DNA from: Octopus sinensis
Lineage: Eukaryota
Direction: 5' to 3'
NCBI RefSeq assembly: GCF_006345805.1
Contig: NW_021837025.1
Span: 62,001-126,000 of the forward strand
DNA: 64,000 bases
The notes beneath the pieces are model-generated. The model was not told the origin of the DNA. It searched no databases and saw only the letters and a program-made list of their open reading frames with translations. Numbering within the stretch: position 1 is the first letter of the stretch; every line of letters begins with the position of its first letter. Both the position numbers and the translations under genes were made by a program. Below are positions 2,683 to 55,052 of the stretch, one piece after another.

Positions 2683-4128
2683 GTGACTCCTCTGAAATTG
2701 GCCACCTCTGAAATTGACCACACTTATAAAATTATCTTAAGAAAAATTCGAATTTCCATTGAAAGTGACCAATTCTCAAATTGACCATAAATTTTAAAAT
2801 ATATTTTATATAATTTGCAAATTAATAAAATTTCAGTTATTTTATGTCTTCGAACAATTCTCATGGTAATTTAACTTATATCAAAAAATACAGATTTTAA
2901 CTTATAAAAATCAAAATGAAGATGTTTCATGTCAGTATTTGGCTGATAGATTTTCCCATTTGTTTAAAAAGAAGATTTCCGGAAAAACAATTAATAATAT
3001 TATTTTGAAAAAAGATTTTTTTCTCAAAGAGTGTAAAAAACAAAATCTATCTTCAAAAATGCGCATAGACTCAAGTTCCCACAGCTTGATGCTATGTTAG
3101 TTGAATGGATGGATTCGATTGAGTCTAAAGGTAATTTGTACTAATTTATGATTAAGGTGGCGTTCTTAATGATGCTTTAATTTCAAATAAGGCTAATTTA
3201 TTCGCAGCTGAATCAAAACTGGATAATTTTAAAAACTCAAATGGATACCTTCATAAATTCAAAAAGAGGCATGGTTTTCAAAATTTCGATCAGCACAGAC
3301 TTGCATGTCTCCGCGCAGGCTGCTGCACAGGGAGTGGGGCCTGGCTGGATGCTCTCCCTGTCCCTTCCACCGGTAACCTATTAGACAAAGATTGCCTACG
3401 AATTGGTTTATCATTGCGTCTTGGATTGGAAATCTGCGAAATACACAAATGTCGTTGTGGTGCTGTCATTGACCGTTTTGGTCTACATCCCCTTTCCTGT
3501 CGTCGCAGTGCAGGGCGCGCACCACGCCATGCAGCACTTAACGACGTTATTCAGAGGGGGCTCACGGCCGCTGGGATTCCATCAATCCTCGAACCCGTCG
3601 GGCTTGCGAGGGGAGACGGAAAAAGACCCGACGGCCTATCGACTTTCCCGTTTGAGTTCGGCAAGTCTCTGTTATGGGATGCGACGTGTTCAGACACTTT
3701 CTCGGAGCTCAACCTTCCTTCTTCAGCTGTCGAGCCTGGCTCAGTCTCTCGCAAAACCGAGAAGATGAAGATTGGAAAGTACAAGGAGCTCTCTGAACGG
3801 TATCTGTTCACTCCCATCGCCGTCGAGACTTCCGGCGTCATCGGCGAAAAGTCTCTTTCCTTTCTAAAAAAGCTTGGCCGCATGGTCTCCCATAAACGGG
3901 GAGACCCACGCGAGTCCAAGTGGCTTTTCGAAAGGATTTCCTTGGCCATAGTACGTGGAAACTGTGTTTCCATTTACGAGGCCGGAAATTTAGTTAGTTA
4001 ATAACTATTTGTTAATTACATATAACATTCATTTAGAAAGATTGATTTTATTTCTCAAATTGGCCATTTCTCGAATTGACCACAAAAACACGTGGAACCA
4101 AAAATGGCCAATTTCAGAGGAGTCACTG
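2683..4128 (+). mobile_element. pogo/Tigger DNA transposon remnant (HTH part of transposase, DDE domain absent)
   Basis: 22-bp TIR GTGACTCCTCTGAAATTGGCCA at 2683 and its inverse at 4105-4126, ending CTG-TA. Translation ISGKTINNIILKK and FPQLDAMLVEW...FKNSNGYLHKFKKRHG matches CENP-B-type HTH domains. Confidence 0.85.
3291..4001 (+). mobile_element. 5'-truncated CRE-like non-LTR retroelement: Zn-knuckle plus restriction-like endonuclease, open frame
   Basis: SGAWLDALP...LRLGLEIC...CRCG...HPLSC...RH...EPVGL..GDGKRPDG...WDATC...KYKEL...P.AVETSG...LFERISLAIVRGN is the C-terminal signature of CRE-clade RLE elements. Confidence 0.85.
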
Positions 4129-7940: not shown

Positions 7941-8590
7941 TTAACAGAGTCCAGAGTCAGCAGGGGGGTCATAAATAATTTTATGAATAGTTTTGAACTG
8001 TGGAGAAGAGGCATCCCGACACAACTCGAAGATAAGACTGTCAGTAGTGGTGAGATATGCCCCAGCACTGGCCATGCGAGAGAAAGCATATTTTCTACAG
8101 AATAAGAAAGGGCGTGCCTGTCAGTCATTGTTCTGGCAGAAACCGCATCGACAGGAATGTGGACAGAATATCCCGCCTCAATCAAGTCCAAAGCAGATTG
8201 TTGGACACAAACATGTGCCTCGATTCCACATATCACCACTGATTTGACTTGAGCTGCTCATATTAGACAAGTCACCAACATTGCTCCATCAACCACTCCG
8301 ACACGGGTGGTATCACCATCGAGAATTTTGTTTTGGCAAACACTGGTGAACTCCCCAGGTCGATTTCAGGTACAGTTGACCCCAGGCCTACAAGGAGGGA
8401 TACAAGACTTACCTTTGGGGTACTGCTCGGTGGCTAGAATGGGCATTTCCATTATTCTCCCACAACACACCAGACGGTTCGCCAGAGTAACAATTTCCTT
8501 GAAATATTTGATCGAAGGCGCGAATTTTGACTGCAAATCACACACAAAAAGTGCAGTAGAACCAACTGTCAACCGCCCTACATTAACCAT
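7941..8590 (-). CDS. Isochorismatase domain-containing protein (ISOC1/2-like)
   Basis: [50 protein letters not shown]. Three micro-introns, the last GC-AG at 8095-8117. Confidence 0.92.
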
Positions 8591-8731
8591 ACAATTTATT
8601 TCAACTAATATATAAAGTACATAAATTATATTATTAATATATAAATAAACTTAATACATTCTTCTCTAAAATGGAGGGAAAATAAACACAGTATAGAAAT
8701 AAATAAAAAATTTTATTTGAAGAGAAAACTA

Positions 8732-9061
8732 TCATTTGGGATAATTCTCGGTAGGATTACGTAGAATGGATTTAGGCTGGGAATGATAAATCAAACAACC
8801 TCTGGGGAGGACGAGAGGGTTGCTGTCTTCTTGAGAATGGACTGGAATGTCAACAAAACACAACCACTGGGTCTTTGTGGCAATTACTAGTCAGATTTTT
8901 GCGTAGAATTGATCTGGGCTGGGGGAGTATGGATGTGGCACTCGCAGGGTCTTCTCGTGGTTGTTCGGTAGACTTGGGAACGAACTCGTCTTTTTTCCGT
9001 AAAATAGACTTGACAGGCTTAGGATTAATTTATTTTCAGCTACAATTTTATTTTCTTGCAT
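8732..9061 (-). CDS. Predicted 85-aa microprotein with four SIL[KR] motifs
   Basis: Exons 9061-9044, 9017-8865, 8841-8800 and 8776-8732, joined by GT-AG introns of 26, 23 and 23 nt, give MQENKIPVKSILRKKDEFVPKSTEQPREDPASATSILPQPRSILRKNLTSNCHKDPVSILKKTATLSSSPEPKSILRNPTENYPK*. Confidence 0.65.
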
Positions 9062-9432
9062 TTATCAAGACTATTTATCGAATCTATACTTATTTTGGAA
9101 AGTACCACGTAGGTTAAAAGTATACTACCAACAATCAATTATCTGTTAACTATTACTGTTGAAATACAAAATGATTAAATAAATATAAATTATATAATTA
9201 ATTATTTTAGATCAGACTCCATTCTTTCTTGAAACTTAACAAAATATATGAGCTATTCATCTGGTCAACGAGGACGCTCTAATGGAGTTACCAGATCTGT
9301 ATCTACTAAAGAATTGCCCCACAATAGTCCCTCGGGGTAACACGCAGAAAGCCGGCAGATCCAAAAGGATCAAACTATTTCCAGTCCAAAGCGTATGAAT
9401 CGTACGAAACAAACCATTTTTTATGGAAGATA

Positions 9433-10298
9433 TTATGTCACATGGGCAACTATGTCGTTATGGGCAGTCTGTCCTTTTACGTGTTTCTATGGAAACCGCG
9501 GAAAAGGTATTAAATATTGAATATAGCAATTTATATATGGAAGAGTGTAGATTAATCAATTATTCTAATTAAAAATTACATTTGAATTATCTTTTAAAAA
9601 TGGCTTACCCAAAAGTATATTAATTTTAACAGCGTGGTCTCTCACACTTTGTGATGTCGGGTTTAAGGGTTACGTCAGAAATATTAACGAATACAATCAA
9701 ATTAAGGAAACGTTAATCGGATATTCCCGGAGGATATGAATGCTCGAAGCAAACACCGGTTGGTTAAAAAAGCTTCCAATTTTGTCAAAAATGTCTGAAG
9801 AATCGTCAGCAGAAACATCATTTAATTTCGAGTTAGGGTTACGTTAGGGTTTGGGTTAAGGTTAGGGTTCAGATTAGGGTTCAGATTTTGAATATATTTA
9901 TGTTGTCACTTGCCAACGTTAGGGTTAAGGTTAGGGTTCAGATTTTGAATATATTTATGTTGTCATTTGCCAACGTTAGGGTTTGGGTTAAGGTTAGAGT
10001 TAAAGTTGTTACAAACTTTGCAAAAAATTTGATGTAAATTATAATTTGCTAATGTTGCAATTTATATTATCAAAAATAAAAATAATTCACATTATAATTT
10101 GCTAATGTTGTAAATAATTTTACTATTTTAAAGCAAGCATGGTTCAAATATAAAACATCATTTTCTCAAAAATTTATAATAGTTGGCCTTTTAGTAAATA
10201 TTTGCTATGTAGTTGCCATGGAAACACGTAAAGGCCAGGTTGCCCATAGGGGTCTGATCACCCATGTGATCACCCATCTGATCTGGTCTGATCACCCA
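9433..10298. mobile_element. Non-autonomous TIR element, copy A
   Basis: The first ~185 bp match 10299-10482. The right end (AGTTGCCATGGAAACACGTAAAGG..GGTTGCCCATAGGGG) is an imperfect inverse of the left subterminal sequence. Confidence 0.65.
9832..10005 (+). repeat. Interstitial TTAGGG-like repeats with an internal ~56-bp duplication
   Basis: About seven TTAGGG hexamers plus TTTGGG and TTAAGG variants. GGTTAGGGTTCAGATTTTGAATATATTTATGTTGTCAYTTGCCAACGTTAGGGTT occurs twice. Confidence 0.8.
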
Positions 10299-11353
10299 TT
10301 ATGTGACATGGGCAACTATGTCGTTATGGGCAGTCTGTCCTTTTACGTGTTTCTGTGGCAACCGCAGAAAAGGTATTCAATATTGAATATAGCAATTTAT
10401 ATATGGAAGAGTGCAGATTAATCAATTATTCTAATTAAAAATTGGATTTGAATTATCTTTTAAAAATGGCTTACCCAAAAGAAACACCCGAAAATAATTA
10501 TTACAATCTAAAGCTACTGATGATCGAGAAGACGTTGCCCCTCAGGATCGCAATGGATATTCTTTGGAACAACCATTGCTTCTCCCGAGGCTCTCTCTGT
10601 CTTCTCGAGATCAGATTCCCGATTTCCCCGACGAGTTCGAACGATTTTTGGCTCATGACCCCGGAGGTTTCTACGGATATTGGGGAGAAGATGAAGTTGT
10701 CCAACAGGTTGGAATATTTCTGAACTTTATGTGCCTCAGCCTTCTCAGCGGCTGAGCCTGGACTGATCGCGGAGTCAACTATATTGGTCTTTGAGAAGGT
10801 GTCTGTGCACGTGGAGTCCCACGCGAGGCATTTCCCATTACTCCACGGGAAAATGGTGACTCCATCTGGGCGTTTACCGTCTCCACGGTCAAGCCCAACG
10901 GGTTCCAGTTCTGTCGGGAATCCAGCTGCTTGTAACGCAGCCGAAATAGTCTCGTTGATAGCGGAGTGTCTGGGAGCACGGCCAGCACTCCCTCTGCATG
11001 ACAGGGGATGTAGTCCTTTGGTATCGACTTTACTACCGCATCGGCATTGGCCCCCCGAACAGACATTAAGTCCCAAGCGTATTGCTACGCCAATCCTCAC
11101 ACAGTCATTATCGAGAAGGGTATATTAAGAAAAAGTGATTTGTATCCGAGTGAGAATACAAATGGATTCTATCCGTTATTGACGTCTATAGTCTGTTTTA
11201 TGATTATAATTATCATAGTTTTGCTTTTTCGAGGCCATTAATTAACGAGTCAGGACTCGAGGTTTCAAAAAATCTCGAGTCCCTATTTTATCTAAATGAT
11301 CCCTGTGAGATTTTAAGGTTGCCCATAGGGGCCTGATTACCCATGTCACATAA
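10299..11353. mobile_element. Non-autonomous TIR element, copy B (contains a CRE-like insert)
   Basis: Perfect 14-bp inverted ends: TTATGTGACATGGG (10299) and CCCATGTCACATAA (11340-11353). Confidence 0.7.
10501..11122 (-). mobile_element. 5'-truncated CRE-like RLE retroelement tail, copy 2, open frame
   Basis: LLDNDCVRIGVAIRLG...CRCG...HPLSC...EPVGLDRGDGKRPDG...WDSTC...KY...LFQRISIAILRGN is homologous to 3291-4001. Confidence 0.85.
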
Positions 11354-11424: not shown

Positions 11425-12333
11425 TTATGGTTTTTCCCTGAAATCACATTTGTCAGTAGTTTTGACATTTGAAAAGAGAGTGTAAAGTCCGAAAAACCCG
11501 CATTTGTACACGTGTATACTGACATTATTGTCTGCTAGAGCACGTCCTTCACGTGTGTTGAGAATGTAGAGAGTTTGTTCGTCTGTAGCGATTAAATTGA
11601 GGTCCAGGAGTTTATAAAATAATTTTTTGTACGTTTCGCAGAACTGGAACAAGACTTTGGCATGACCAGCGAACATGGCACCCCCAACCCACTCTAGGGC
11701 GTCTTTGGTGATTATATCCATGGATCTTTCATGAAAATCTCTTACCTGGGAGAAGAAAATGCTGTTATTGTCAATGTATTTGGAAGTTGTAAAACTATAG
11801 TCCATTTGAGGTTTGGTATTACGCAATAACCCCATGTCTGTCCATGCAAAATACGAGGACGTATTTGAAAACATTCGAATGGCTCTTTCTACCAGTTCGT
11901 GTTTGGAATTCACGATTGCCGAATACTCGAAATTACCCGTTTGGAGTGGGTGCTTTCCATAACCCGGAAGAGTGAATATTTCCTGTATTTTCTGAATATT
12001 TTTAAATCCAATCAACTCCCAACGAGAAAGATAAATGACAGTGGTTTGTTTTCCTTTTCGGACCTTTAACAGTTGGTCGAGAAAAGATTTGCTATCCGAG
12101 AAAAACACAATGTGATTTTTCACAAACCCGTATTTATAAATCCACTCATAGTACTGGGAAGGCTTCCGAATTCCGCCTGGCTTCAAAAATTCCCCAAGAT
12201 TGTAGTAGCCAGAAACTATTACAAAATCTTCATTGTTTACTGTTTCCGGCTTTTTTGGGCATACAAGATAATATAGTATGATGAGGAAAACAGACATGAT
12301 TAACAGGACTTTATATTTCTTGTAAAAAAACAT
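11425..12333 (-). CDS. HtrL/YibB-like protein with N-terminal membrane anchor; intronless
   Basis: 302-aa ORF. The motifs IVSGYY, YYEW, IVFFSD, YSAIVNSKHELVERAI, YFAWTDMG, WVGGAMFAG and ATDEQTLY match my recollection of the HtrL/YibB family. Hydrophobic stretch at residues 9-25. Confidence 0.65.
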   Translation of the reverse strand: MFFYKKYKVLLIMSVFLIILYYLVCPKKPETVNNEDFVIVSGYYNLGEFLKPGGIRKPSQYYEWIYKYGFVKNHIVFFSDSKSFLDQLLKVRKGKQTTVIYLSRWELIGFKNIQKIQEIFTLPGYGKHPLQTGNFEYSAIVNSKHELVERAIRMFSNTSSYFAWTDMGLLRNTKPQMDYSFTTSKYIDNNSIFFSQVRDFHERSMDIITKDALEWVGGAMFAGHAKVLFQFCETYKKLFYKLLDLNLIATDEQTLYILNTREGRALADNNVSIHVYKCGFFGLYTLFSNVKTTDKCDFREKP

Positions 12334-12479
12334 TGTTAAATGCGATTGAAACTGGTGAATATTTATGAAAATTCGGTCAACTATTATTACAGAAATAAAA
12401 TTATAATTTGAAAATTAGATTTACCATTTCGTTACAAAAAAATGATTATAAATACTTATTAAGAAAGAACTAAAAAAAA

Positions 12480-13620
12480 GAAAAACTTGAAAATGTCTTT
12501 CGGGTAAGAAATCTTCTATTCTGCCAAGAACCAGTCTTTCCAGGATTTTTGACATTGAACATAAGAGGGAAATCGGCCTGAAAGATGCCGGGTCCCCTCT
12601 TGGTCTTCCAGGCTTCAGTATCGGCCGTATTAGGGCCTGTTTCCATATTGACGGAATCACGTTGTTGTTGATTGAATAGTTGAAAATGGATGTTAGGAAC
12701 CTGACTCCTTCGACACCAAGGTTTTTTAATAGAATGATCGGGATTTTGTCCGGGCCGTGAGAATACGAAGATTTTGTGGGGTGCAAGGTATCTTCCACCT
12801 CCTTTACCGAAAGGAGGAGCGGTTCAGCCCGTTTTTTTAGGCTTCTGTTGGAGGGGAGTGAGTCGGATTTCCTGTGCTCTTTGTGTGCATTTTTCGCATA
12901 GAAATTCATGAGGCTGTTCACGTCTTTTTTATCAAAATCTTCAAAAGGTTCGGGAGCGTCCCCCCTGGCCACGTGCCGAATGGCTTTCCACACTTCACCC
13001 GTTGAACGATTACGGTTCATGGTAGAAAGAATGCGATTCCATTTCAAATAGGTGTGCCTGTGTTCACTGGTCTTCAATTCCTTGTTTAAATATTGGATGC
13101 GGGTAATTATGTCAGAAGACATTCGGTTTGACTTTTTGAGGCGATTTCTCGCCTTGGCCAGACCGGATATCCTTCGACTACAAGCAGCGTGAGGTGGACG
13201 TTTAGGAATAGCCATTGCTCTTGCTTCCAGAATGATCTTCGAGAAGAAGCCAATGGCCTTGTCGAGAGAGCTAAAGTTGTACAGATTGCAATTTTTTAGT
13301 CTCGTGTTCAATATCTCTTCGAACCGTGGCCAGTTGGCCGCTTTGTAATAGTATGGAATTGGAACTTTCCTGGTGACAACTTCTCTTTTGATCTTCACCG
13401 TTATCGGGTTGTGATCGCTTCTCGTTTCATAGAAGACTGACCACTCCGTAGATGATGCAAGAGAAGGAGAGCATAAAGTTACATCGGGTGATTGTCGGTC
13501 CCTCTGAATGGGGTTCTTGTGTTTCTCGATGGGTTGTTCAGGATAGTTAAGGAATCCAATTGGGAAAGTAGAGATTTCCCTCTCGTATCCGCCAACTGAT
13601 TAGAGAGCTAAAGGGGGTGT
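12480..13620 (-). mobile_element. APE-type LINE fragment (end of endonuclease, linker, first RT motifs)
   Basis: RSDHNPITV, AANWPRF, SHGPDKIP, WKQALIRPILKPG, SFRPISLLCSMSKILERL. Confidence 0.9.
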
Positions 13621-23519: not shown

Positions 23520-24470
23520 AGTGATGAGACTGAATATTTGTGGAAAATCAGACTGTAAATCCCTTTTAGAGTAAACAGATACTCGTGCTGGTGTCAAAAA
23601 TGAAGAAACAGTTACAGTTCTTTCATGTACAAATTGGATAGAAAATGATAATCAGAACAAGCCTCTGGTAATCAGAACAAGTCTCCGCATTGTTTGAAAA
23701 TTTTCAAAATACATTAATGACCAACGTACAGATGACGTTTAAAAATGTAATAATATAAATGAGGAAAATATTTCCACAATAGTGCCACAAGTAATATATT
23801 TCCACAAATGAATCAGCTTTGGTGATTTTTTGGTCCTACTCAGCGGTGATTTGACAATTCTGCAACAGGAAACAAAATAAAAGATTATTTTCGTGTAATA
23901 TATTCTTCGTCACATGCATCAATTGTATGTCAGATTGTGGATTATAGGATTCGATGTGCAAATGTCGAGAGGAAAAAGTATATGATTTCAGCCAAAAAAA
24001 CACTAAAAAATTTGTATCTAATTTATTCCACGCAACATGTATTGCACATTTAATTTACAATTGTGCTTTAAGGATAAGACTAAATTATCCTGTAGTGGAT
24101 AATTTAATTACCTTTATAAAAGGAATTTGTCAAAGAATAATTGTCGAAGGCAACTATTTGCTGAAATAGAACCTATTGTTACTAAATGGGAAAGCTGTCT
24201 CTGAGCAATCAAGTACTACGCGGAAAATTTTCCAAGAGTGTTAGAAATATGCAATTCGCTGAAATATTGATTTGAAGAGCAATGGAATCAATAAAAATGA
24301 AGGACTTTTTAATGATTTAAAGGAGATATGGAATGAATATTCCCCACTCGTTGATGTTCTTAGTGAAATTGAGTTAAGAAACTTTTCTATCCAAAAGGCA
24401 TATAATTTTCAGAGAAAACTTGATTTAAAAGAAGATGCATGTAAAATAAATGAATATATCGAGAATAGGT
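23520..24470 (+). pseudogene. Decayed hAT-related transposase
   Basis: LFHATCIAHLIYNCALRIR and EPIVTKWESCL*AIKYYAENFP correspond to the hAT CxxH and P.xTRW motifs. Many stops. Confidence 0.65.
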
Positions 24471-24507
24471 ATTTCCATACTTCGAAATATTTCCATACTT
24501 CGACCTC

Positions 24508-24934
24508 TTCCATACTTCGACCTCTTAGCCTCCTCAGCCTGAGCACTGGCAGAACCCGGTTAGTGATGGACTTGAGTAACACCGACGCGGAGAACGAGTC
24601 AACACAAGTTGCATCCCAAATCAGGGACTGCCTTCCCTGAAAGGGAAGGTAGTCATCCCGTCAGGACGCTTTCATCACTCCGGCAGAGACCGACTGGCTC
24701 TAGAGTGGGGGGAAACCTGCCGACTCTAGAGCACTTTTGACGATGTCATTGAGGTGAGTGTGGCGAGAAATTCTGCCAGCACTCTTCTTGCACGATAGGG
24801 CGTGGAAACCGTTCGGGAGATCGTAGACCCGCACCGGCATGGGTGGGGCTGACAGATGTCCAGGGCCAAGTGTAAGCAAACACCAATCCGTAAGGATTCG
24901 TCGTCCAGAAGTAGTCCCGTACTAGGGGTAGGGT
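24508..24934 (-). pseudogene. CRE-like RLE fragment, copy 3, frameshifted and truncated at both ends
   Basis: [17 protein letters not shown]...CRCG...[15 protein letters not shown]...EPVGL..KRPDG...WDATC...AEEAKRSKYG. Confidence 0.85.
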
Positions 24935-26818
24935 CCCTACTCAGTTCTCCACGTGTGTGATATCAATCGAGCTCATTTTTTCAGAGGATCAGTTTGAAAT
25001 ATTCTGGATAATATGCGCTTTTTACAGCTCGTCTAAAACCTTTTTATCTACTCTATTCTGGCGTTTTAAATTTTCAGCAAGATTTGCGTAATTATAAATA
25101 TCCCTACTCAGTTCCACGTGTGTGATATCAATCGAGCTCTTTTTTTCAGGGGATCAGTTTGAAATATTTCTGAATAATATGCGCTTTTTACAGCTCGTCT
25201 AAAACCTTTTATCTACTCTATTCTGGCGTTTTAAAATTTTCAGCAAGATTTGCGTAATTATAAATATCCTACTCAGTCTCCACGTGTGTGATATCAATCG
25301 AGCTCTTTTTTTCAGGGGATCAGTTTGAAATATTTCTGGATAATATGCGCTTTTTACAGCTCGTCTAAAACCTTTTATCTACTCTATTCTGGCGTTTTAA
25401 AATTTTCAGCAAGATTTGCGTAATTATAAATATCCCTACTCAGTTCTCCACGTGTGTGATATCAATCGAGCTCTTTTTTTCAGGGGATCAGTTTGAAATA
25501 TTTCTGGATAATATGCGCTTTTTACAGCTCATCTAAAACCTTTTATCTACTCTATTCTGGCGTTTTAAAATTTTCAGCAAGATTTGCGTAATTATAAATA
25601 TCCCTACTCAGTTCTCCACGTGTGTGATATCAATCGAGCTCATTTTTTCAGGGGATCAGTTTGAAATATTTCTGGATAATATGCGCTTTTTACTGCTCGT
25701 CTAAAACCTTTTTATCTACTCTATTCTGGCGTTTTAAAATTTTCAGCAAGATTTGCGTAATTATAAATATCCCTCAGTTCTCCACGTGTGTGATATCAAT
25801 CGAGCTCTTTTTTGTCAGGGGATCAGTTTGAAATATTTCTGGATAATATGCGCTTTTTAAAGCTCGTCTAAAACCTTTTTATCTACTCTATTCTGGCGTT
25901 TTAAAATTTTCAGCAAGATTGCGTAATTATAAATATCCCTACTCAGTTCTCCACGTGTGTGATATCAATCGAGCTCTTTTTTTCAGGGGATCAGTTTGAA
26001 ATATTTCTGGATAATATGCGCTTTTTATGCTCGTCTAAAACCTTTTATCTACTCTATTCTGGCGTTTTAAAATTTTCAGCAAGATTTGCGTAATTATAAA
26101 TATCCCTACTCAGTTCTCCACGTGTGTGATATCAATCGAGCTTTTTTTTCAGGGGATCAGTTTGAAATATTTCTGGATAATATGCGCTTTTTAAAGCTCG
26201 TCTAAAACCTTTTTATCTACTCTATTCTGGCGTTTTAAAATTTTCAGCAAGATTTGCGTAATTATAAATATCCCTACTCAGTTCTCCACGTGTGTGATAT
26301 CAATCGAGCTCTTTTTTTCAGGGGATCAGTTTGAAATATTTCTGGATAATATGCGCTTTTTACTGCTCGTCTAAAACCTTTTTATCTACTCTATTCTGGC
26401 GTTTTAAAATTTTCAGCAAGATTTGCGTAATTATAAATATCCTACTCAGTTCTCCACGTGTGTGATATCAATCGAGCTCTTTTTTTCAGGGGATCAGTTT
26501 GAAATATTTCTGGATAATATGCGCTTTTTACAGCTCGTCTAAAACCTTTTTATCTACTCTATTCTGGCGTTTTAAAATTTTCAGCAGAGATTGCGTAATT
26601 ATAAATATCCCTACTCAGTTCTCCACGTGTGTGATATCAATCGAGCTCTTTTTTTTAGGGGATCAGTTTGAAATATTTCTGGATAATATGCGCTTTTTAC
26701 AGCTCGTCTAAAACCTTTTGATCTCTCTATTCTGGCGTTTTAAATTTTCAGCAAGATTTGCGTAATTATAAAGATCCCTACTCAGTTCTCCACGTGTGTG
26801 ATATCAATCGAACTCTTT
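24935..26818. repeat. Tandem satellite, 11 full units of ~167-168 bp plus a partial 12th
   Basis: Units start at 24935, 25102, 25268, 25434, 25602, 25771, 25937, 26104, 26272, 26440, 26609 and 26776 (CCCTACTCAGTTCTCCACGTGTGTGATATCAATCGAGCTC...). Units differ mainly by homopolymer indels. Confidence 0.97.
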
Positions 26819-37289: not shown

Positions 37290-38707
37290 CAGGCATTCTC
37301 AACCTTTTTTTGTTCATCGCCCCCTTAGATATTTTATCTCCCCCTTGTCCACATACAATTTAAAATTTTTTGTGAATTGTCCCTTAATTGGTTTTTTTGT
37401 ATATAAAACAATAAATCAAATGTAAAAATTGAATTTTTATTAAAAATTATTACTGAACCCTTGACATTTTATTAAAAATTCAAAAATAACCTCACAAATC
37501 CCATTAAAACAGCTTTACTATCTACAATGACGCTTTCATGAATTTGTAAAGAAAACTTACTTTGCTTCAGTCTTTCAATAAGAATTTCTTTTATATTATC
37601 ACCCATTTCATCAATTCTTCGACGAATCGAATCATTGCTAAGAGGTAGACTTAATATTTTTCGAAGCATCTTTATGCATTACATCCGATATTATTACTTC
37701 CTGTGATGGAATTATTATATTTTCTGCGATAGTATGAGAACTTGAAGTTTTCGCAATAATTTCAGCAATTTTATAAGAAGCGATCTGCGCACCCACAACT
37801 ATACATACAGTGCAACCCCTTATTGGGGCGACCCCGGACGTGGGGCACCCTCGGGTTTTGGGGTTTTGACGCATTATATGACGGAGTTATAAAATGTCAA
37901 TCTATTGAGGAACTAATTTTTTCAATTAATGCAATGGAAGATGGCATTTTTCAGCATGCGCCAGAGATATTAAATGAATTTTATAATTTTAAGAAGTTGA
38001 CAATGGATCGATTAATTCAAAAGTACAAATTCGGAGCGAAAATAACGGATCATTTTCCGACAAGTAAAGACTAAAATTGTTAAATGAAATTAAGAATAAA
38101 CATCTTTTGGTTTTAAATTAACAAAACGTTAGTTTTTTTCGTTAATATTAGAAAACCCCTCTATCTAGGGAAACCCCTGTTTTTGGGGCACTTAGTGCCC
38201 CAAAAAGAGGTTAGACTGTATAAATAAATGTTAAATAACCATTATGTACTGGCTTTGTAAATAACGATTTGATCGTTTTCTTATTTTCAAAATTGTATTT
38301 TAAAGTTTGAAAATATTCAATCGGCTTTGACATTTTATCCGGGTGCTTGCGTTTTAAATGATCCTGTAATCGTGATGGCTTCATCGCTTCATCTGAGAAA
38401 GAACATTGACAAATAAGACGATAAGGCTGTTTTGTATTTTCAGTACTTTGAATAAACACATATTTTAAATATTCGTTTTGATAATGACGACTTTTCTTAT
38501 TTGAGCGAGAAGATATCTTAAACACTTTCTAGATGTAAAAATATAAAATTTAAGGATAAATACTATAGAAGAAATATTAATAAATCTCAAACATTAAAAT
38601 TAACATGTATAAATACTTGTACGAATATTTTATTAAATACATTATCGCCCCCTTTAACCTAATTATCGCCCTCCTGTACAAAATTTTCGCCCCCGGTTGA
38701 GAACACC
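37290..38707 (-). mobile_element. hAT (Buster/Charlie) deletion derivative carrying the transposase N-terminal half
   Basis: Ends CAGGCATTCTCAACC and GGTTGAGAACACC. BED-type EAMKPSRLQDHLKRKHP, ASYKIA..HTIAE..II, and LSNDSIRRRIDEM. Confidence 0.9.
37808..38218 (+). mobile_element. Tc1/mariner-type MITE nested in the hAT transposase
   Basis: TA-CAGTGCAACCCC ... GAGGTTAGACTG-TA (imperfect TIRs, TA duplication). It interrupts the hAT reading frame and carries an 11-bp-stem hairpin near the right end. Confidence 0.85.
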
Positions 38708-53868: not shown

Positions 53869-55052
53869 CAGGCATTCTCAACCTTTTTTTGTTCATCGCC
53901 CCCTTAGATATTTTGTCGCCCCCCTTTGAAATTTTATCGCCCCCTTGTCCACCTACAATTTAAAAATTTTTGGGCATTGTCCCTTAATTGGTTGTTTTTT
54001 GTACATAACTTAAAAACCAAAATATAAAATTATAAATCAAATGTAAAAAATTGAATTTTTATTAAAAATTATTAGTGAGACCCTTGATATTGATGTTTAC
54101 TCGCTAAATATTATATGTCGGGTTTAATTCTGCTCAACTTTAGGCGTATATCGCCTCTATAACACACTTCCAGTCTATTTTTTTCACATTGTGTATTATG
54201 ATTGACAAAACTAAATCCACTTTCAACTAAATAAGTGGTAGGGAATGTCAATAGTACATTACTCATTTCCTTCCATAAATTTGGAAATTTCATTTGTAGA
54301 TCTTTTGATTGCCAAAATTTAGAGATACCATCCTGTTGAAATCTGTGAATATATTCTTCATTATATTTCAATTCAATTATCTCTTCTGATTGGATTTCCA
54401 ATAGTTCCATTTGTAAACTTTCATCTGCATTGGAAACATTAAAAGAGAATGATGATGCGAATAATGAAAATTGTTGTTCAAAAGACGAAAAATCATTAAA
54501 TCTTTCTTGAAATTCCTCTAACAACGATTCTAGTTGTCTTTCGTACTGGTAAATAAAACGAACTTCATAACAAAAAATTATGTGACGTGTTCTGAAATTT
54601 CGATTTTCATAAATATTATGATTATCAAGTCATATTAAAATATAAAAGGGCAAATATTAAAAAATTTTAATAGAAATTGATTTGAAAGGAATAAATCGAA
54701 ATAAAATATAAAAATGATGAAATTTCAAACTGTATAATGACAAAATTAAAGTTCATAAGAATAAGAATTATTCCTTCATAATCAATCAATTGAAATAAAC
54801 CAATATAGAAAAACATAAAAACGACAACAAACTAAACTACGTGTATAGCGTGCTCTAAATTATTAGGCTTGCCATTAAAAATATTCTAATTAAACAATTT
54901 TTAAGGTTAGGGCCTGTTTAATAGTGTGCTAATAGTCCACCTCGGATTTTTAATAAATATAAATTTTATTTTTTATTAAATATATTATCGCCCCCCTGTA
55001 CAAAATTATCGCCCCCTTGTACAAAATTTTCGCCCCCGGTTGAGAACACCTG
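53869..55052 (-). mobile_element. hAT (Buster) deletion derivative carrying the transposase C-terminus
   Basis: TIRs CAGGCATTCTCAACC and GGTTGAGAACACCTG with an 8-bp TSD TTTTAGAG (central TA) on both sides. FPNLW..LLTFPTTYLVESGFS dimerisation motif. Confidence 0.95.

What the first reader, a model, noticed from the sequence alone, without database searches (positions are those of the whole stretch)
8732..9061. Hidden 85-aa microprotein made of tandem SILK (PP1-docking) motifs
Invisible in the ORF track. Three canonical micro-introns (26, 23 and 23 nt, all phase 0) join four exons encoding KSILRKK, RSILRKN, VSILKKT and KSILRNP plus a degenerate TSILP in a Pro/Ser-rich, probably disordered chain. 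Three of the four motifs start at or within three codons of an exon boundary, suggesting exon duplication. [GS]IL[KR] is an established protein-phosphatase-1 docking motif, as in Inhibitor-2 and KNL1, usually paired with RVxF. A stand-alone multi-SILK protein with no RVxF is not one I recognise. It could be a multivalent PP1 scaffold or competitor.
Basis: partly seen in the sequence, partly recalled or inferred. Interest (0 to 1): 0.7.

Follow-up and report, generated by a model that had tools for sequence, protein, structure and literature searches.

The report
Tiny repeat-motif gene with micro-introns
This is probably a real but unverified gene for a 77-86-residue disordered protein, split by 23-base introns, that carries three or four Ser-Ile-Leu-Arg/Lys motifs resembling a phosphatase-1 docking site, though nothing yet shows it binds that phosphatase.

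Summary
Exons 9061-9044, 9017-8865, 8841-8800 and 8776-8732, joined by GT..AG introns of 26, 23 and 23 nt, give exactly the 85-aa protein described. The window is an animal genome with ultra-short introns: 20 homology-verified introns in neighbouring genes measure 22-29 nt. Micro-introns are therefore normal here.

Introns 2 and 3 look like the verified set. Four ELM-type SILK motifs within 240 nt exceed chance (0 of 200 simulations). Conservation among the four units has a period of three. All differences in the S, I and L codons are synonymous. No plus-strand gene model can link the units.

The weak points:
- Intron 1 is atypical (AAG acceptor, 50% A).
- A fourth intron-like element lies inside exon 2, which allows rival 5' models.
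- Codon usage is only marginally coding-like.
- No homologue, Pfam family or transcript evidence was found.

The PP1 reading rests on a four-residue motif. There is no RVxF, and three of the four copies end in Arg, not Lys.

Verdict: probably a real, lineage-specific, disordered repeat protein built by duplicating an intron-plus-exon module. PP1 docking is the best candidate function but is untested. Interest is moderate.

The parts
9044..9061 (-). Proposed exon 1 (ATG 9061-9059; MQENKI)
   Evidence: This is the only ATG that can reach the KSILRKK frame through a short intron. Inferred, not verified.
9018..9043 (-). Proposed intron 1, 26 nt, GTAGCT..CCTAAG (atypical)
   Evidence: It has an AAG acceptor (0 of 20 verified introns have one), 50% A against 17+-8% in verified introns, and a PWM score of -2.0 against a mean of +2.4 (sd 3.0).
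8865..9017 (-). Exon 2 (51 codons: PVKSILRKK...TSILP..PRSILRKN...DPV)
   Evidence: Frame B is open from 9026 to 8853 (read). AF2 predicts no secondary structure, pTM 0.15.
8919..8941 (-).
   Evidence: One search lists it. Splicing it from the ATG frame without intron 1 also gives an in-frame product (read directly from the sequence). Its composition is exon-like (58% C) and its PWM score is -5.3.
8842..8864 (-). Intron 2, 23 nt, GTTGTGTTTTGTTGACATTCCAG
   Evidence: Length, T-richness and CAG acceptor are typical (PWM +1.1). In-frame alternative donors give 20 or 26 nt.
8800..8841 (-). Exon 3 (SILKKTATLSSSPE)
8777..8799 (-). Intron 3, 23 nt, GTTGTTTGATTTATCATTCCCAG
   Evidence: Typical (PWM +4.9) and similar to intron 2.
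8732..8776 (-). Exon 4 (PKSILRNPTENYPK, stop TGA 8734-8732)
8997..9008 (-). Motif copy 1, TCT ATT TTA CGG = SILR
8922..8933 (-). Degenerate copy, TCC ATA CTC CCC = SILP
8901..8912 (-). Motif copy 2, TCA ATT CTA CGC = SILR
8830..8841 (-). Motif copy 3, TCC ATT CTC AAG = SILK
8759..8770 (-). Motif copy 4, TCC ATT CTA CGT = SILR
8712..8717 (-). AATAAA 15 nt after the stop codon (possible poly(A) signal; weak evidence in AT-rich DNA)
7941..8590 (-). Neighbouring gene, not part of the feature: isochorismatase-domain (ISOC-like) gene, ATG at 8590, 141 nt downstream of the stop codon

Best explanation
A small, lineage-specific protein-coding gene lies on the minus strand of an animal genome with ultra-short introns, from a dicyemid or a myxobolid.

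It consists of four tandem modules. Each module is a 23-26 nt GT..AG element followed by an exon that begins, within 0-3 codons, with P-x-S-I-L-[RK]-[KN]. The modules most likely arose by duplicating an intron-plus-exon unit.

The product is 77-86 aa, depending on how the 5' half is spliced. It is basic (pI about 10), rich in Pro/Ser/Thr, and unfolded. It therefore works as a carrier of three or four copies of one short linear motif that dock onto a folded partner.

The best known candidate partner is the SILK pocket of protein phosphatase 1. A protein with several such sites and no RVxF anchor would bind weakly at each site. It could either hold PP1 through avidity or rebinding, or compete with SILK-dependent regulators.

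What is shown: the motifs, the frames, the typical introns 2 and 3, selection on the motif at the amino-acid level, and the unfolded character.

What is inferred: transcription and translation, the 5' exon structure, and any binding to PP1. My sub-estimates are about 0.65 that the gene is real and about 0.2-0.25 that it docks PP1.
For: (1) Micro-introns are the rule in this genome.
- 20 introns were verified by homology in ThrRS, ISOC, DDX20 and Piezo. They measure 22-29 nt, with modes at 23 and 25.
- Removing the ten ThrRS introns gives an uninterrupted 665-aa ThrRS.
- The literature reports introns under 30 nt in animals only for myxobolids and Dicyema, with splice signals reduced to GTa/AG (PMC13644364; PMC6736024).

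(2) Introns 2 and 3 score +1.1 and +4.9 on a PWM whose leave-one-out mean over verified introns is +2.4 (sd 3.0). Their length and T-richness are typical.

(3) The motif cluster and the frame links exceed chance.
- The cluster of 4 motifs was reached in 0 of 200 simulations.
- Valid frame links arise in 0.118 and 0.071 of shuffles.

(4) Conservation among the four units has a period of three (44x 444 x4x 33x 44x).
- 14 pairwise nucleotide differences in the SIL[RK] core are synonymous.
- The other 8 are all Arg<->Lys.
- Of the six frames, the minus-strand SIL frame has the most synonymous differences.

(5) No plus-strand GT..AG can link the units.

(6) The annotated frame has the best codon log-odds of the three frames on that strand. 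Frame B beats frame A in the disputed segment.

(7) The locus is single-copy in the window and not part of a repeat family. There is no Rfam match.

(8) The protein lies on the disordered side of the Uversky plot. AF2 gives no secondary structure.

(9) All four motifs fit [GS]IL[KR][^DE], and their context PVKSILRKK resembles the SILK site of Inhibitor-2. Both the regular expression and the Inhibitor-2 site are recalled from memory, not tested here.
Against: - The codon log-odds for the whole CDS is only +3 bits. Same-length windows of known genes give 17.5+-7.3, with a 5th percentile of 6.9.
- Intron 1 is atypical: an AAG acceptor (0 of 20 verified introns) and 50% A.
- A second intron-like element (8941-8919) and a second open frame allow other 5' models.
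- There is no homologue in 5.8 billion or 1.8 billion protein sets and no Pfam family. However, this organism itself seems absent from those sets.
- No transcript data could be consulted.
- For PP1: there is no RVxF. SILK is an auxiliary site; in Rif1, SILK to SAAA costs about 20-fold in affinity, whereas RVSF to RVSA leaves under 0.1% of it. The experimentally confirmed definition ends in Lys, while three of the four copies here end in Arg. A PP1 molecule has a single SILK pocket.
Confidence: 0.55

Rival explanations
1. It is not a functional gene. The region would be a decayed tandem duplication (a dead gene or old minisatellite of about 65-95 nt units) in the 140-470 nt upstream of the ISOC start codon. 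The short ORF and GT..AG pairs would be left-overs or chance.
For: - The codon log-odds lies below the 5th percentile of known genes.
- A codon-based chaining gene-finder gives no path here.
- No homologues were found.
- Intron 1 is atypical.
- The CDS is short, so open frames are not very improbable.
Against: - Neutral decay should not leave conservation with a period of three, and only synonymous changes in the S, I and L codons.
- It should not preserve two typical, correctly phased 23-nt introns. The joint chance of both links is about 0.008, the product of the two fractions.
- TRF finds no DNA-level tandem repeat here. Outside the motif the units are at background identity.
Confidence: 0.2
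2. It is a real gene with a different 5' half (model M2). Intron 1 is not spliced. Translation from ATG 9061 runs in frame A to 8942 (MQENKIVAENKLILSLSSLFYGKKTSSFPSLPNNHEKTLR). The 23-nt element 8941-8919 is then spliced, joining to PRSILRKN.... This gives 86 aa with three motifs.

The hydrophobic LILSLSSLFYG segment could be a weak signal peptide. The protein would then be a secreted repeat-peptide precursor, cut at the basic residues that follow each SIL to give peptides ending in -SIL.
For: - Element 8941-8919 is 23 nt, GT..CAG, and splices in phase 0 from frame A to the motif frame (reading).
- Every exon would then start with the motif.
- Dibasic RKK, RK or KK follows three of the motifs.
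- Frame A is open from 9061 to 8894.
Against: - PVKSILRKK would then sit out of frame by coincidence, although its three differences from copy 4 are all synonymous in frame B.
- The element is 58% C, with the lowest PWM score of all (-5.3).
- Frame A scores 3 bits worse than frame B.
- The hydrophobic stretch is short and interrupted by Ser. No signal-peptide predictor was available.
Confidence: 0.12
3. All four intron-like elements are spliced, and the assembly carries (or the gene tolerates) a 1-nt length difference in the A6 run 8996-8991 (model M4). This gives MQENKI|PVKSILRKKTSSFPSLPNNHEKTLR|PRSILRKN...|SILKK...|PKSILRNP..., 77 aa with four motifs, each at the start of an exon.
For: - Both frames are open across 8990-8942.
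- Exon U1 is 76 nt, one base off a multiple of three.
- KKTSS after motif 1 parallels KKTAT after motif 3.
- Homopolymer length errors are common in long-read assemblies (general knowledge).
Against: - It requires an unobserved sequence change.
- It uses both atypical introns.
- The sequencing technology of the assembly is not known.
Confidence: 0.06
4. The ORF is an upstream ORF or leader of the ISOC transcript. It would be translated only incidentally, or as a regulatory peptide, and is not an independent gene.
For: - It is on the same strand as ISOC, only 141 nt before the ISOC ATG.
- No promoter evidence exists either way.
Against: - AATAAA lies 15 nt after the stop.
- Neighbouring independent genes are equally close: the ISOC stop at 7941 and the ADF-H gene from about 7772.
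- Amino-acid-level conservation of a repeated motif is not expected of an incidental uORF.
Confidence: 0.07

Closest known systems
SILK docking motif of PP1-interacting proteins (Inhibitor-2/PPP1R2, KNL1, Rif1, RRP1B)
   Same: - There are four matches to [GS]-I-L-[KR] followed by a non-acidic residue.
- They lie in a basic, disordered chain.
- The context P-V-K-S-I-L-R-K-K resembles the Inhibitor-2 site P-I-K-G-I-L-K-N-K (the latter recalled from memory).
   Different: - Known carriers have one SILK site that assists an RVxF anchor. Here there are 3-4 copies and no RVxF.
- Three copies end in Arg, whereas structures have shown only Lys.
- Binding has not been tested.
Inhibitor-2 family (Pfam IPP-2, PF04979)
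   Same: It is small, hydrophilic and disordered, with a SILK-type site near the N terminus.
   Different: There is no Pfam match even at E<=10. It has no KSQKW-type RVxF and no HYNE/IDoHA helix. It is 85 aa rather than about 200 aa.
Ultra-short-intron genes of Dicyema japonicum and myxobolid Myxozoa
   Same: It has 23-nt GT..AG introns with reduced splice signals. These match verified introns of the same window and the published description.
   Different: Intron 1 (AAG acceptor, A-rich) lies outside the verified range.
Repeat-peptide precursors (prohormone-like proteins with a repeated C-terminal motif and basic cleavage sites)
   Same: The repeated ...SIL is followed by RKK, RK, KK or R.
   Different: There is no Gly for amidation. 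No homologue is known.

Membership tests
PP1 SILK docking motif (short linear motif class) | Sequence G/S-I/V-L-K (experimentally confirmed; pattern searches also accept R at position 4) | tested here: met
   SILRK, SILRK, SILKK and SILRN are at residues 10, 42, 58 and 74. Only one copy has the Lys seen in solved complexes (definition from PMC9813921).
PP1 SILK docking motif (short linear motif class) | Lies in an intrinsically disordered region | tested here: met
   The protein is on the disordered side of the Uversky plot, with GRAVY -0.96. The AF2 model of exon 2 has no secondary structure and pTM 0.15 (single sequence, so weak evidence).
PP1 SILK docking motif (short linear motif class) | Accompanied by an RVxF anchor, [RK]x0-1[VI]{P}[FW] | tested here: not met
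   No match in any of the three protein models. The consensus is from PMC4794898.
PP1 SILK docking motif (short linear motif class) | Binds the SILK pocket of the PP1 catalytic subunit | not testable with these tools
   No complex prediction or binding assay is available, and no PP1 gene lies in the window.
Inhibitor-2 (Pfam PF04979 IPP-2) | Match to the family profile | tested here: not met
   hmmscan against Pfam-A found 0 families at E<=10.
Spliceosomal micro-introns of this genome | GT..AG, 22-29 nt, YAG acceptor, T-rich and A-poor interior | tested here: met
   Introns 2 and 3 are 23 nt with a CAG acceptor, 53% T, and PWM scores of +1.1 and +4.9 against a verified mean of +2.4 (sd 3.0).
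Spliceosomal micro-introns of this genome | The same features, for intron 1 (9043-9018) | tested here: inconclusive
   The 26-nt length and GT..AG ends are fine. But it has an AAG acceptor (0 of 20 verified), 50% A (verified maximum 39%), and PWM -2.0.
Secreted repeat-peptide precursor | N-terminal signal peptide | tested here: inconclusive
Model M2 has LILSLSSLFYG (1.67). No dedicated predictor was available.
Protein-coding gene (general) | Homologues or transcript evidence | tested here: not met
   No homologue was found. The organism appears absent from the protein collections and the metagenome scan found only distant intron-less ISOC genes, so this test has little power. No transcript data could be reached.

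The most novel reading that the evidence does not exclude
This is a stand-alone, RVxF-less, multivalent SILK protein. Four weak SILK sites on one 9.6-kDa disordered chain would let it gather several PP1 catalytic subunits. Alternatively, it could act as a decoy for the SILK pocket and so tune SILK-dependent regulators such as Inhibitor-2 or KNL1. That would be a mode of PP1 control not described so far. It would have been built in a parasite genome by duplicating an intron-plus-exon module.
Probability: 0.15. Interest if true: 0.65.

Novelty: new variant of a known kind. Interest (0 to 1): 0.4.

Why it matters
If real, this matters in three ways.

- Genomes with ultra-short introns hide small protein genes. 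ORF scans and codon-based gene finders both miss them; my own chaining finder missed this one.
- It gives a clean example of a protein repeat built by duplicating an intron together with its exon.
- It offers a natural test of whether the SILK pocket of PP1 can be used on its own, multivalently, without the RVxF anchor that nearly all regulators need.

If the PP1 link fails, what remains is an ordinary orphan disordered micro-protein.

Tried and rejected
- **Plus-strand coding.** The reverse complement of the motif reads F-[FL]-R-[KR]-[IM]-D-L, with variable sites again at third positions. It has fewer synonymous differences (10 against 18), and no plus-strand GT..AG can join unit 4 to unit 3. 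Rejected.
- **DNA-level motif or transcription-factor site array.** TCNATTYTNCG occurs 5 times in the window, 3 of them here. A binding site would not show degeneracy with a period of three. Rejected as the main explanation.
- **Repeat family or transposon.** blastn of 8600-9300 against the window finds only itself and the internal motif match. Rejected.
- **Non-coding RNA.** No Rfam match at E<=1.
- **N-terminal extension of ISOC.** An in-frame TAA lies 5 codons before the ISOC ATG, with no AG in between. Rejected.
- **Upstream exons.** The only other ATG route needs introns of 358-406 nt from ATG 9417 inside a repeated element. Unlikely.
- **Homologue searches.**
  - The word-index search of the 85 aa found nothing.
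  - HMMER of exon 2 against 1.84 billion representatives found one hit, E 2.3e-4, a 427-aa protein with three N-terminal repeats and no SIL[KR] motif. I judged it spurious.
  - An exact look-up of the 302-aa neighbouring ORF found nothing.
  - A metagenome scan with ISOC returned only homologues of 54% identity or less, without introns.
- **Intron surveys without homology.** An ORF-joining survey was swamped by noise. A donor-motif length survey was uninformative. A codon-based chaining finder mis-placed several verified introns, so its AAG/GAG acceptors cannot be trusted.

Full report
**What is there**

The finding lies on the minus strand.

| Part | Coordinates | Content |
|---|---|---|
| Exon 1 | 9061-9044 | MQENKI |
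| Intron 1 | 9043-9018 | 26 nt, GTAGCT..CCTAAG |
| Exon 2 | 9017-8865 | 51 codons |
| Intron 2 | 8864-8842 | 23 nt |
| Exon 3 | 8841-8800 | SILKKT... |
| Intron 3 | 8799-8777 | 23 nt |
| Exon 4 | 8776-8732 | ends in stop TGA |

All introns are phase 0. The product is MQENKIPVKSILRKKDEFVPKSTEQPREDPASATSILPQPRSILRKNLTSNCHKDPVSILKKTATLSSSPEPKSILRNPTENYPK. The mechanical ORF list shows only fragments.

**Are introns of 23-26 nt believable here?**

Yes. The window is an animal genome. It contains:
- threonyl-tRNA synthetase, DDX20 and Piezo;
- CPEB, a TBC RabGAP, PNKP, a KH protein and an ADF-H protein;
- ORFs whose sequences look like non-LTR retrotransposon fragments (Pfam finds nothing in the two I tested).

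I aligned three-frame translations to solved structures and looked for the GT..AG that restores the frame. This verified 20 introns: ThrRS 10, ISOC 3 (one of them GC-AG), DDX20 4, Piezo 3. Removing the ten ThrRS introns gives an uninterrupted 665-aa ThrRS.

The verified introns are 22-29 nt long (seven of 23 nt, eight of 25 nt). All have YAG acceptors. Their interiors are T-rich (41%) and A-poor (17+-8%). Published work reports introns under 30 nt in animals only for myxobolid Myxozoa and Dicyema japonicum, with splice signals reduced to GTa and AG (PMC13644364). Dicyema has 36.7% GC and 49% repeats, many of them LINEs (PMC6736024), which fits this window. I did not establish the species.

**Is the motif cluster more than chance, and is it coding?**

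- Four matches to [GS]IL[KR][^DE] fall within 240 nt on one strand. In 200 Markov simulations of the window the largest cluster was never 4.
- I aligned the four units on the Ser codon. Identity is at background everywhere except the motif. There it follows codon positions: 44x 444 x4x 33x 44x.
  - Ser is TCT/TCA/TCC/TCC.
  - Leu is TTA/CTA/CTC/CTA.
  - Arg is CGG/CGC/CGT.
  - The only amino-acid change is Arg to Lys in unit 3.
- Of all six frames, this one has the most synonymous differences.
- The wobble-matched plus-strand frame (F-[FL]-R-[KR]-[IM]-D-L) comes second. But no plus-strand GT..AG can join its units.
- Shuffled spacers allow a stop-free, in-frame 20-29 nt GT..YAG link in 11.8% and 7.1% of trials for the two downstream junctions.
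- Introns 2 and 3 score +1.1 and +4.9 on a splice-site PWM whose leave-one-out mean over verified introns is +2.4 (sd 3.0). They resemble each other and verified introns such as GTTGGTGTGTTGTGGTTATTTCCAG.

Taken together, the 3' two-thirds of the model looks like a real spliced coding sequence whose motif is under selection at the amino-acid level.

**Weak points**

- *Codon usage.* The total codon log-odds of the CDS is +3 bits. Same-length windows of the window's known genes give 17.5+-7.3. The annotated frame is the best of the three frames on its strand, but only marginally coding-like. This is partly expected for a Pro/Ser/Lys-rich disordered chain scored against globular proteins. A codon-based chaining finder does not call the locus.
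- *Intron 1.* It is the only short-intron route from an ATG to KSILRKK, and it is atypical. It has an AAG acceptor (0 of 20 verified), 50% A (verified maximum 39%), and PWM -2.0.
- *A fourth intron-like element.* Inside exon 2 sits GTGCCACATCCATACTCCCCCAG (8941-8919, 23 nt), directly before PRSILRKN. The locus is therefore four modules of [GT..AG element] plus [motif exon]. Two alternative models follow.
  - M2: translating from the same ATG without intron 1 and splicing this element is also in frame. It gives 86 aa, three motifs, and a hydrophobic LILSLSSLFYG near the N terminus.
  - M4: splicing all four elements would need a 1-nt change in the A6 run 8996-8991.
  - This element is C-rich and exon-like (PWM -5.3). 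Frame B scores 3 bits better than frame A in the disputed segment. All of motif 1's differences from the other copies are synonymous in frame B.

**Search for relatives and known families**

- Pfam gives nothing at E<=10.
- The word-index search of the 85 aa finds no candidate.
- A full HMMER pass of exon 2 over 1.84 billion representatives gives one hit at E 2.3e-4. It is a repeat protein without the motif, which I regard as spurious.
- These negatives have little power. The organism's own proteins seem absent from the collections, and a metagenome scan with the neighbouring ISOC protein returned only distant, intron-less homologues.
- The locus is single-copy in the window and has no Rfam match.

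**What it probably does**

The product is basic (pI 9.9) and has GRAVY -0.96. It contains 11 Pro, 11 Ser and 6 Thr and only two aromatic residues, and it lies on the disordered side of the Uversky plot. AF2 on exon 2 shows no secondary structure. A protein like this acts through its repeated linear motif.

The motif fits the PP1 SILK site, and the first copy's context resembles the Inhibitor-2 site (from memory). Three points weigh against the PP1 reading:
- The experimentally confirmed definition is G/S-I/V-L-K (PMC9813921), and three copies here end in Arg.
- SILK is an auxiliary site. In Rif1, SILK to SAAA costs about 20-fold in affinity, while RVSF to RVSA leaves under 0.1% of it (PMC5437018).
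- There is no RVxF (consensus from PMC4794898).

I therefore treat PP1 docking as the leading but unproven hypothesis, at about 0.2-0.25. Rivals are a secreted peptide precursor (under M2), a uORF of ISOC, and a dead repeat.

**Context**

The stop codon is followed after 15 nt by AATAAA. The ISOC gene starts 141 nt downstream on the same strand. ISOC is itself followed closely by an ADF-H gene, so tight spacing of co-oriented genes is normal here. ISOC cannot be fused to this ORF (reading).

**Verdict**

- The gene is probably real (about 0.65), with an uncertain 5' end.
- Duplication of an intron-plus-exon module is well supported by the anatomy.
- The PP1 interpretation is plausible but untested.
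- Novelty: a new variant of a known kind, if the SILK reading holds; otherwise an orphan disordered micro-protein.
- Interest: 0.4.

Noticed in passing
window 8095-8117 (-): The third intron of the ISOC gene appears to be a 23-nt GC-AG intron (GCACGCCCTTTCTTATTCTGTAG). Only this choice restores the alignment ..[19 protein letters not shown].. to ISOC proteins (the human ISOC2 sequence used for comparison was recalled from memory).
   Followed up: partly
window 8853-9061 (-): Two overlapping reading frames are both open for more than 55 codons: frame A 9061-8894 and frame B 9026-8853. Exon U1 is one base off a multiple of three, next to an A6 run (8996-8991). This could reflect alternative splicing, an exonised intron, or a homopolymer assembly error.
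   Followed up: partly
window 24470-24526 (+): A 17-18 nt tandem repeat (TTCCATACTTCGA..) also translates to SILR three times in different frames. It shares 9 of 11 bases with the motif DNA TCCATTCTACG. It is a DNA-level repeat at the edge of another element and is probably a coincidence.
   Followed up: partly
window 24934-26818: A 168-bp satellite of 11.3 copies at 96% identity.
   Followed up: no
window 9832-9995 (+): A 57-nt tandem repeat built from telomere-like GTTAGG/TTAGGG units, just upstream of the locus.
   Followed up: no
window 9395-9572 and 10218-10438 (+): There are two copies of a short dispersed element, sharing ORF fragments such as ..MEECRLINYSN. The repeat-rich stretch begins about 200 nt upstream of the proposed start codon.
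   Followed up: no
window 11425-12333 (-): A single-exon 302-aa ORF with an N-terminal hydrophobic segment matches Pfam HtrL_YibB, described as a 'bacterial protein of unknown function' (E 2.9e-8). It lies between ORFs that look like retrotransposon fragments and may have been acquired horizontally.
   Followed up: no
window 3414-4001 (+), 10501-11100 (-), 12421-13398 (-): These ORFs look like fragments of non-LTR retrotransposons. Two share a ..HPLSCR.SAGRAPRH..DGKRPDG.. domain. Pfam finds nothing in the two I tested.
   Followed up: partly
window 38641-38694, 53895-53946, 54984-55037: A 21-nt unit (ATTATCGCCCCCTGTACAAA) occurs as short tandem arrays at three separate places.
   Followed up: no
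window 8675-8686 (-): A further TCC ATT TTA GAG (SILE) lies in the AT-rich spacer between the stop codon and ISOC. It can be reached from exon 4 only through a 32-nt GT..TAG (8760-8729) into a low-complexity ORF. It may instead be a polypyrimidine/TAG acceptor of an ISOC leader.
   Followed up: no
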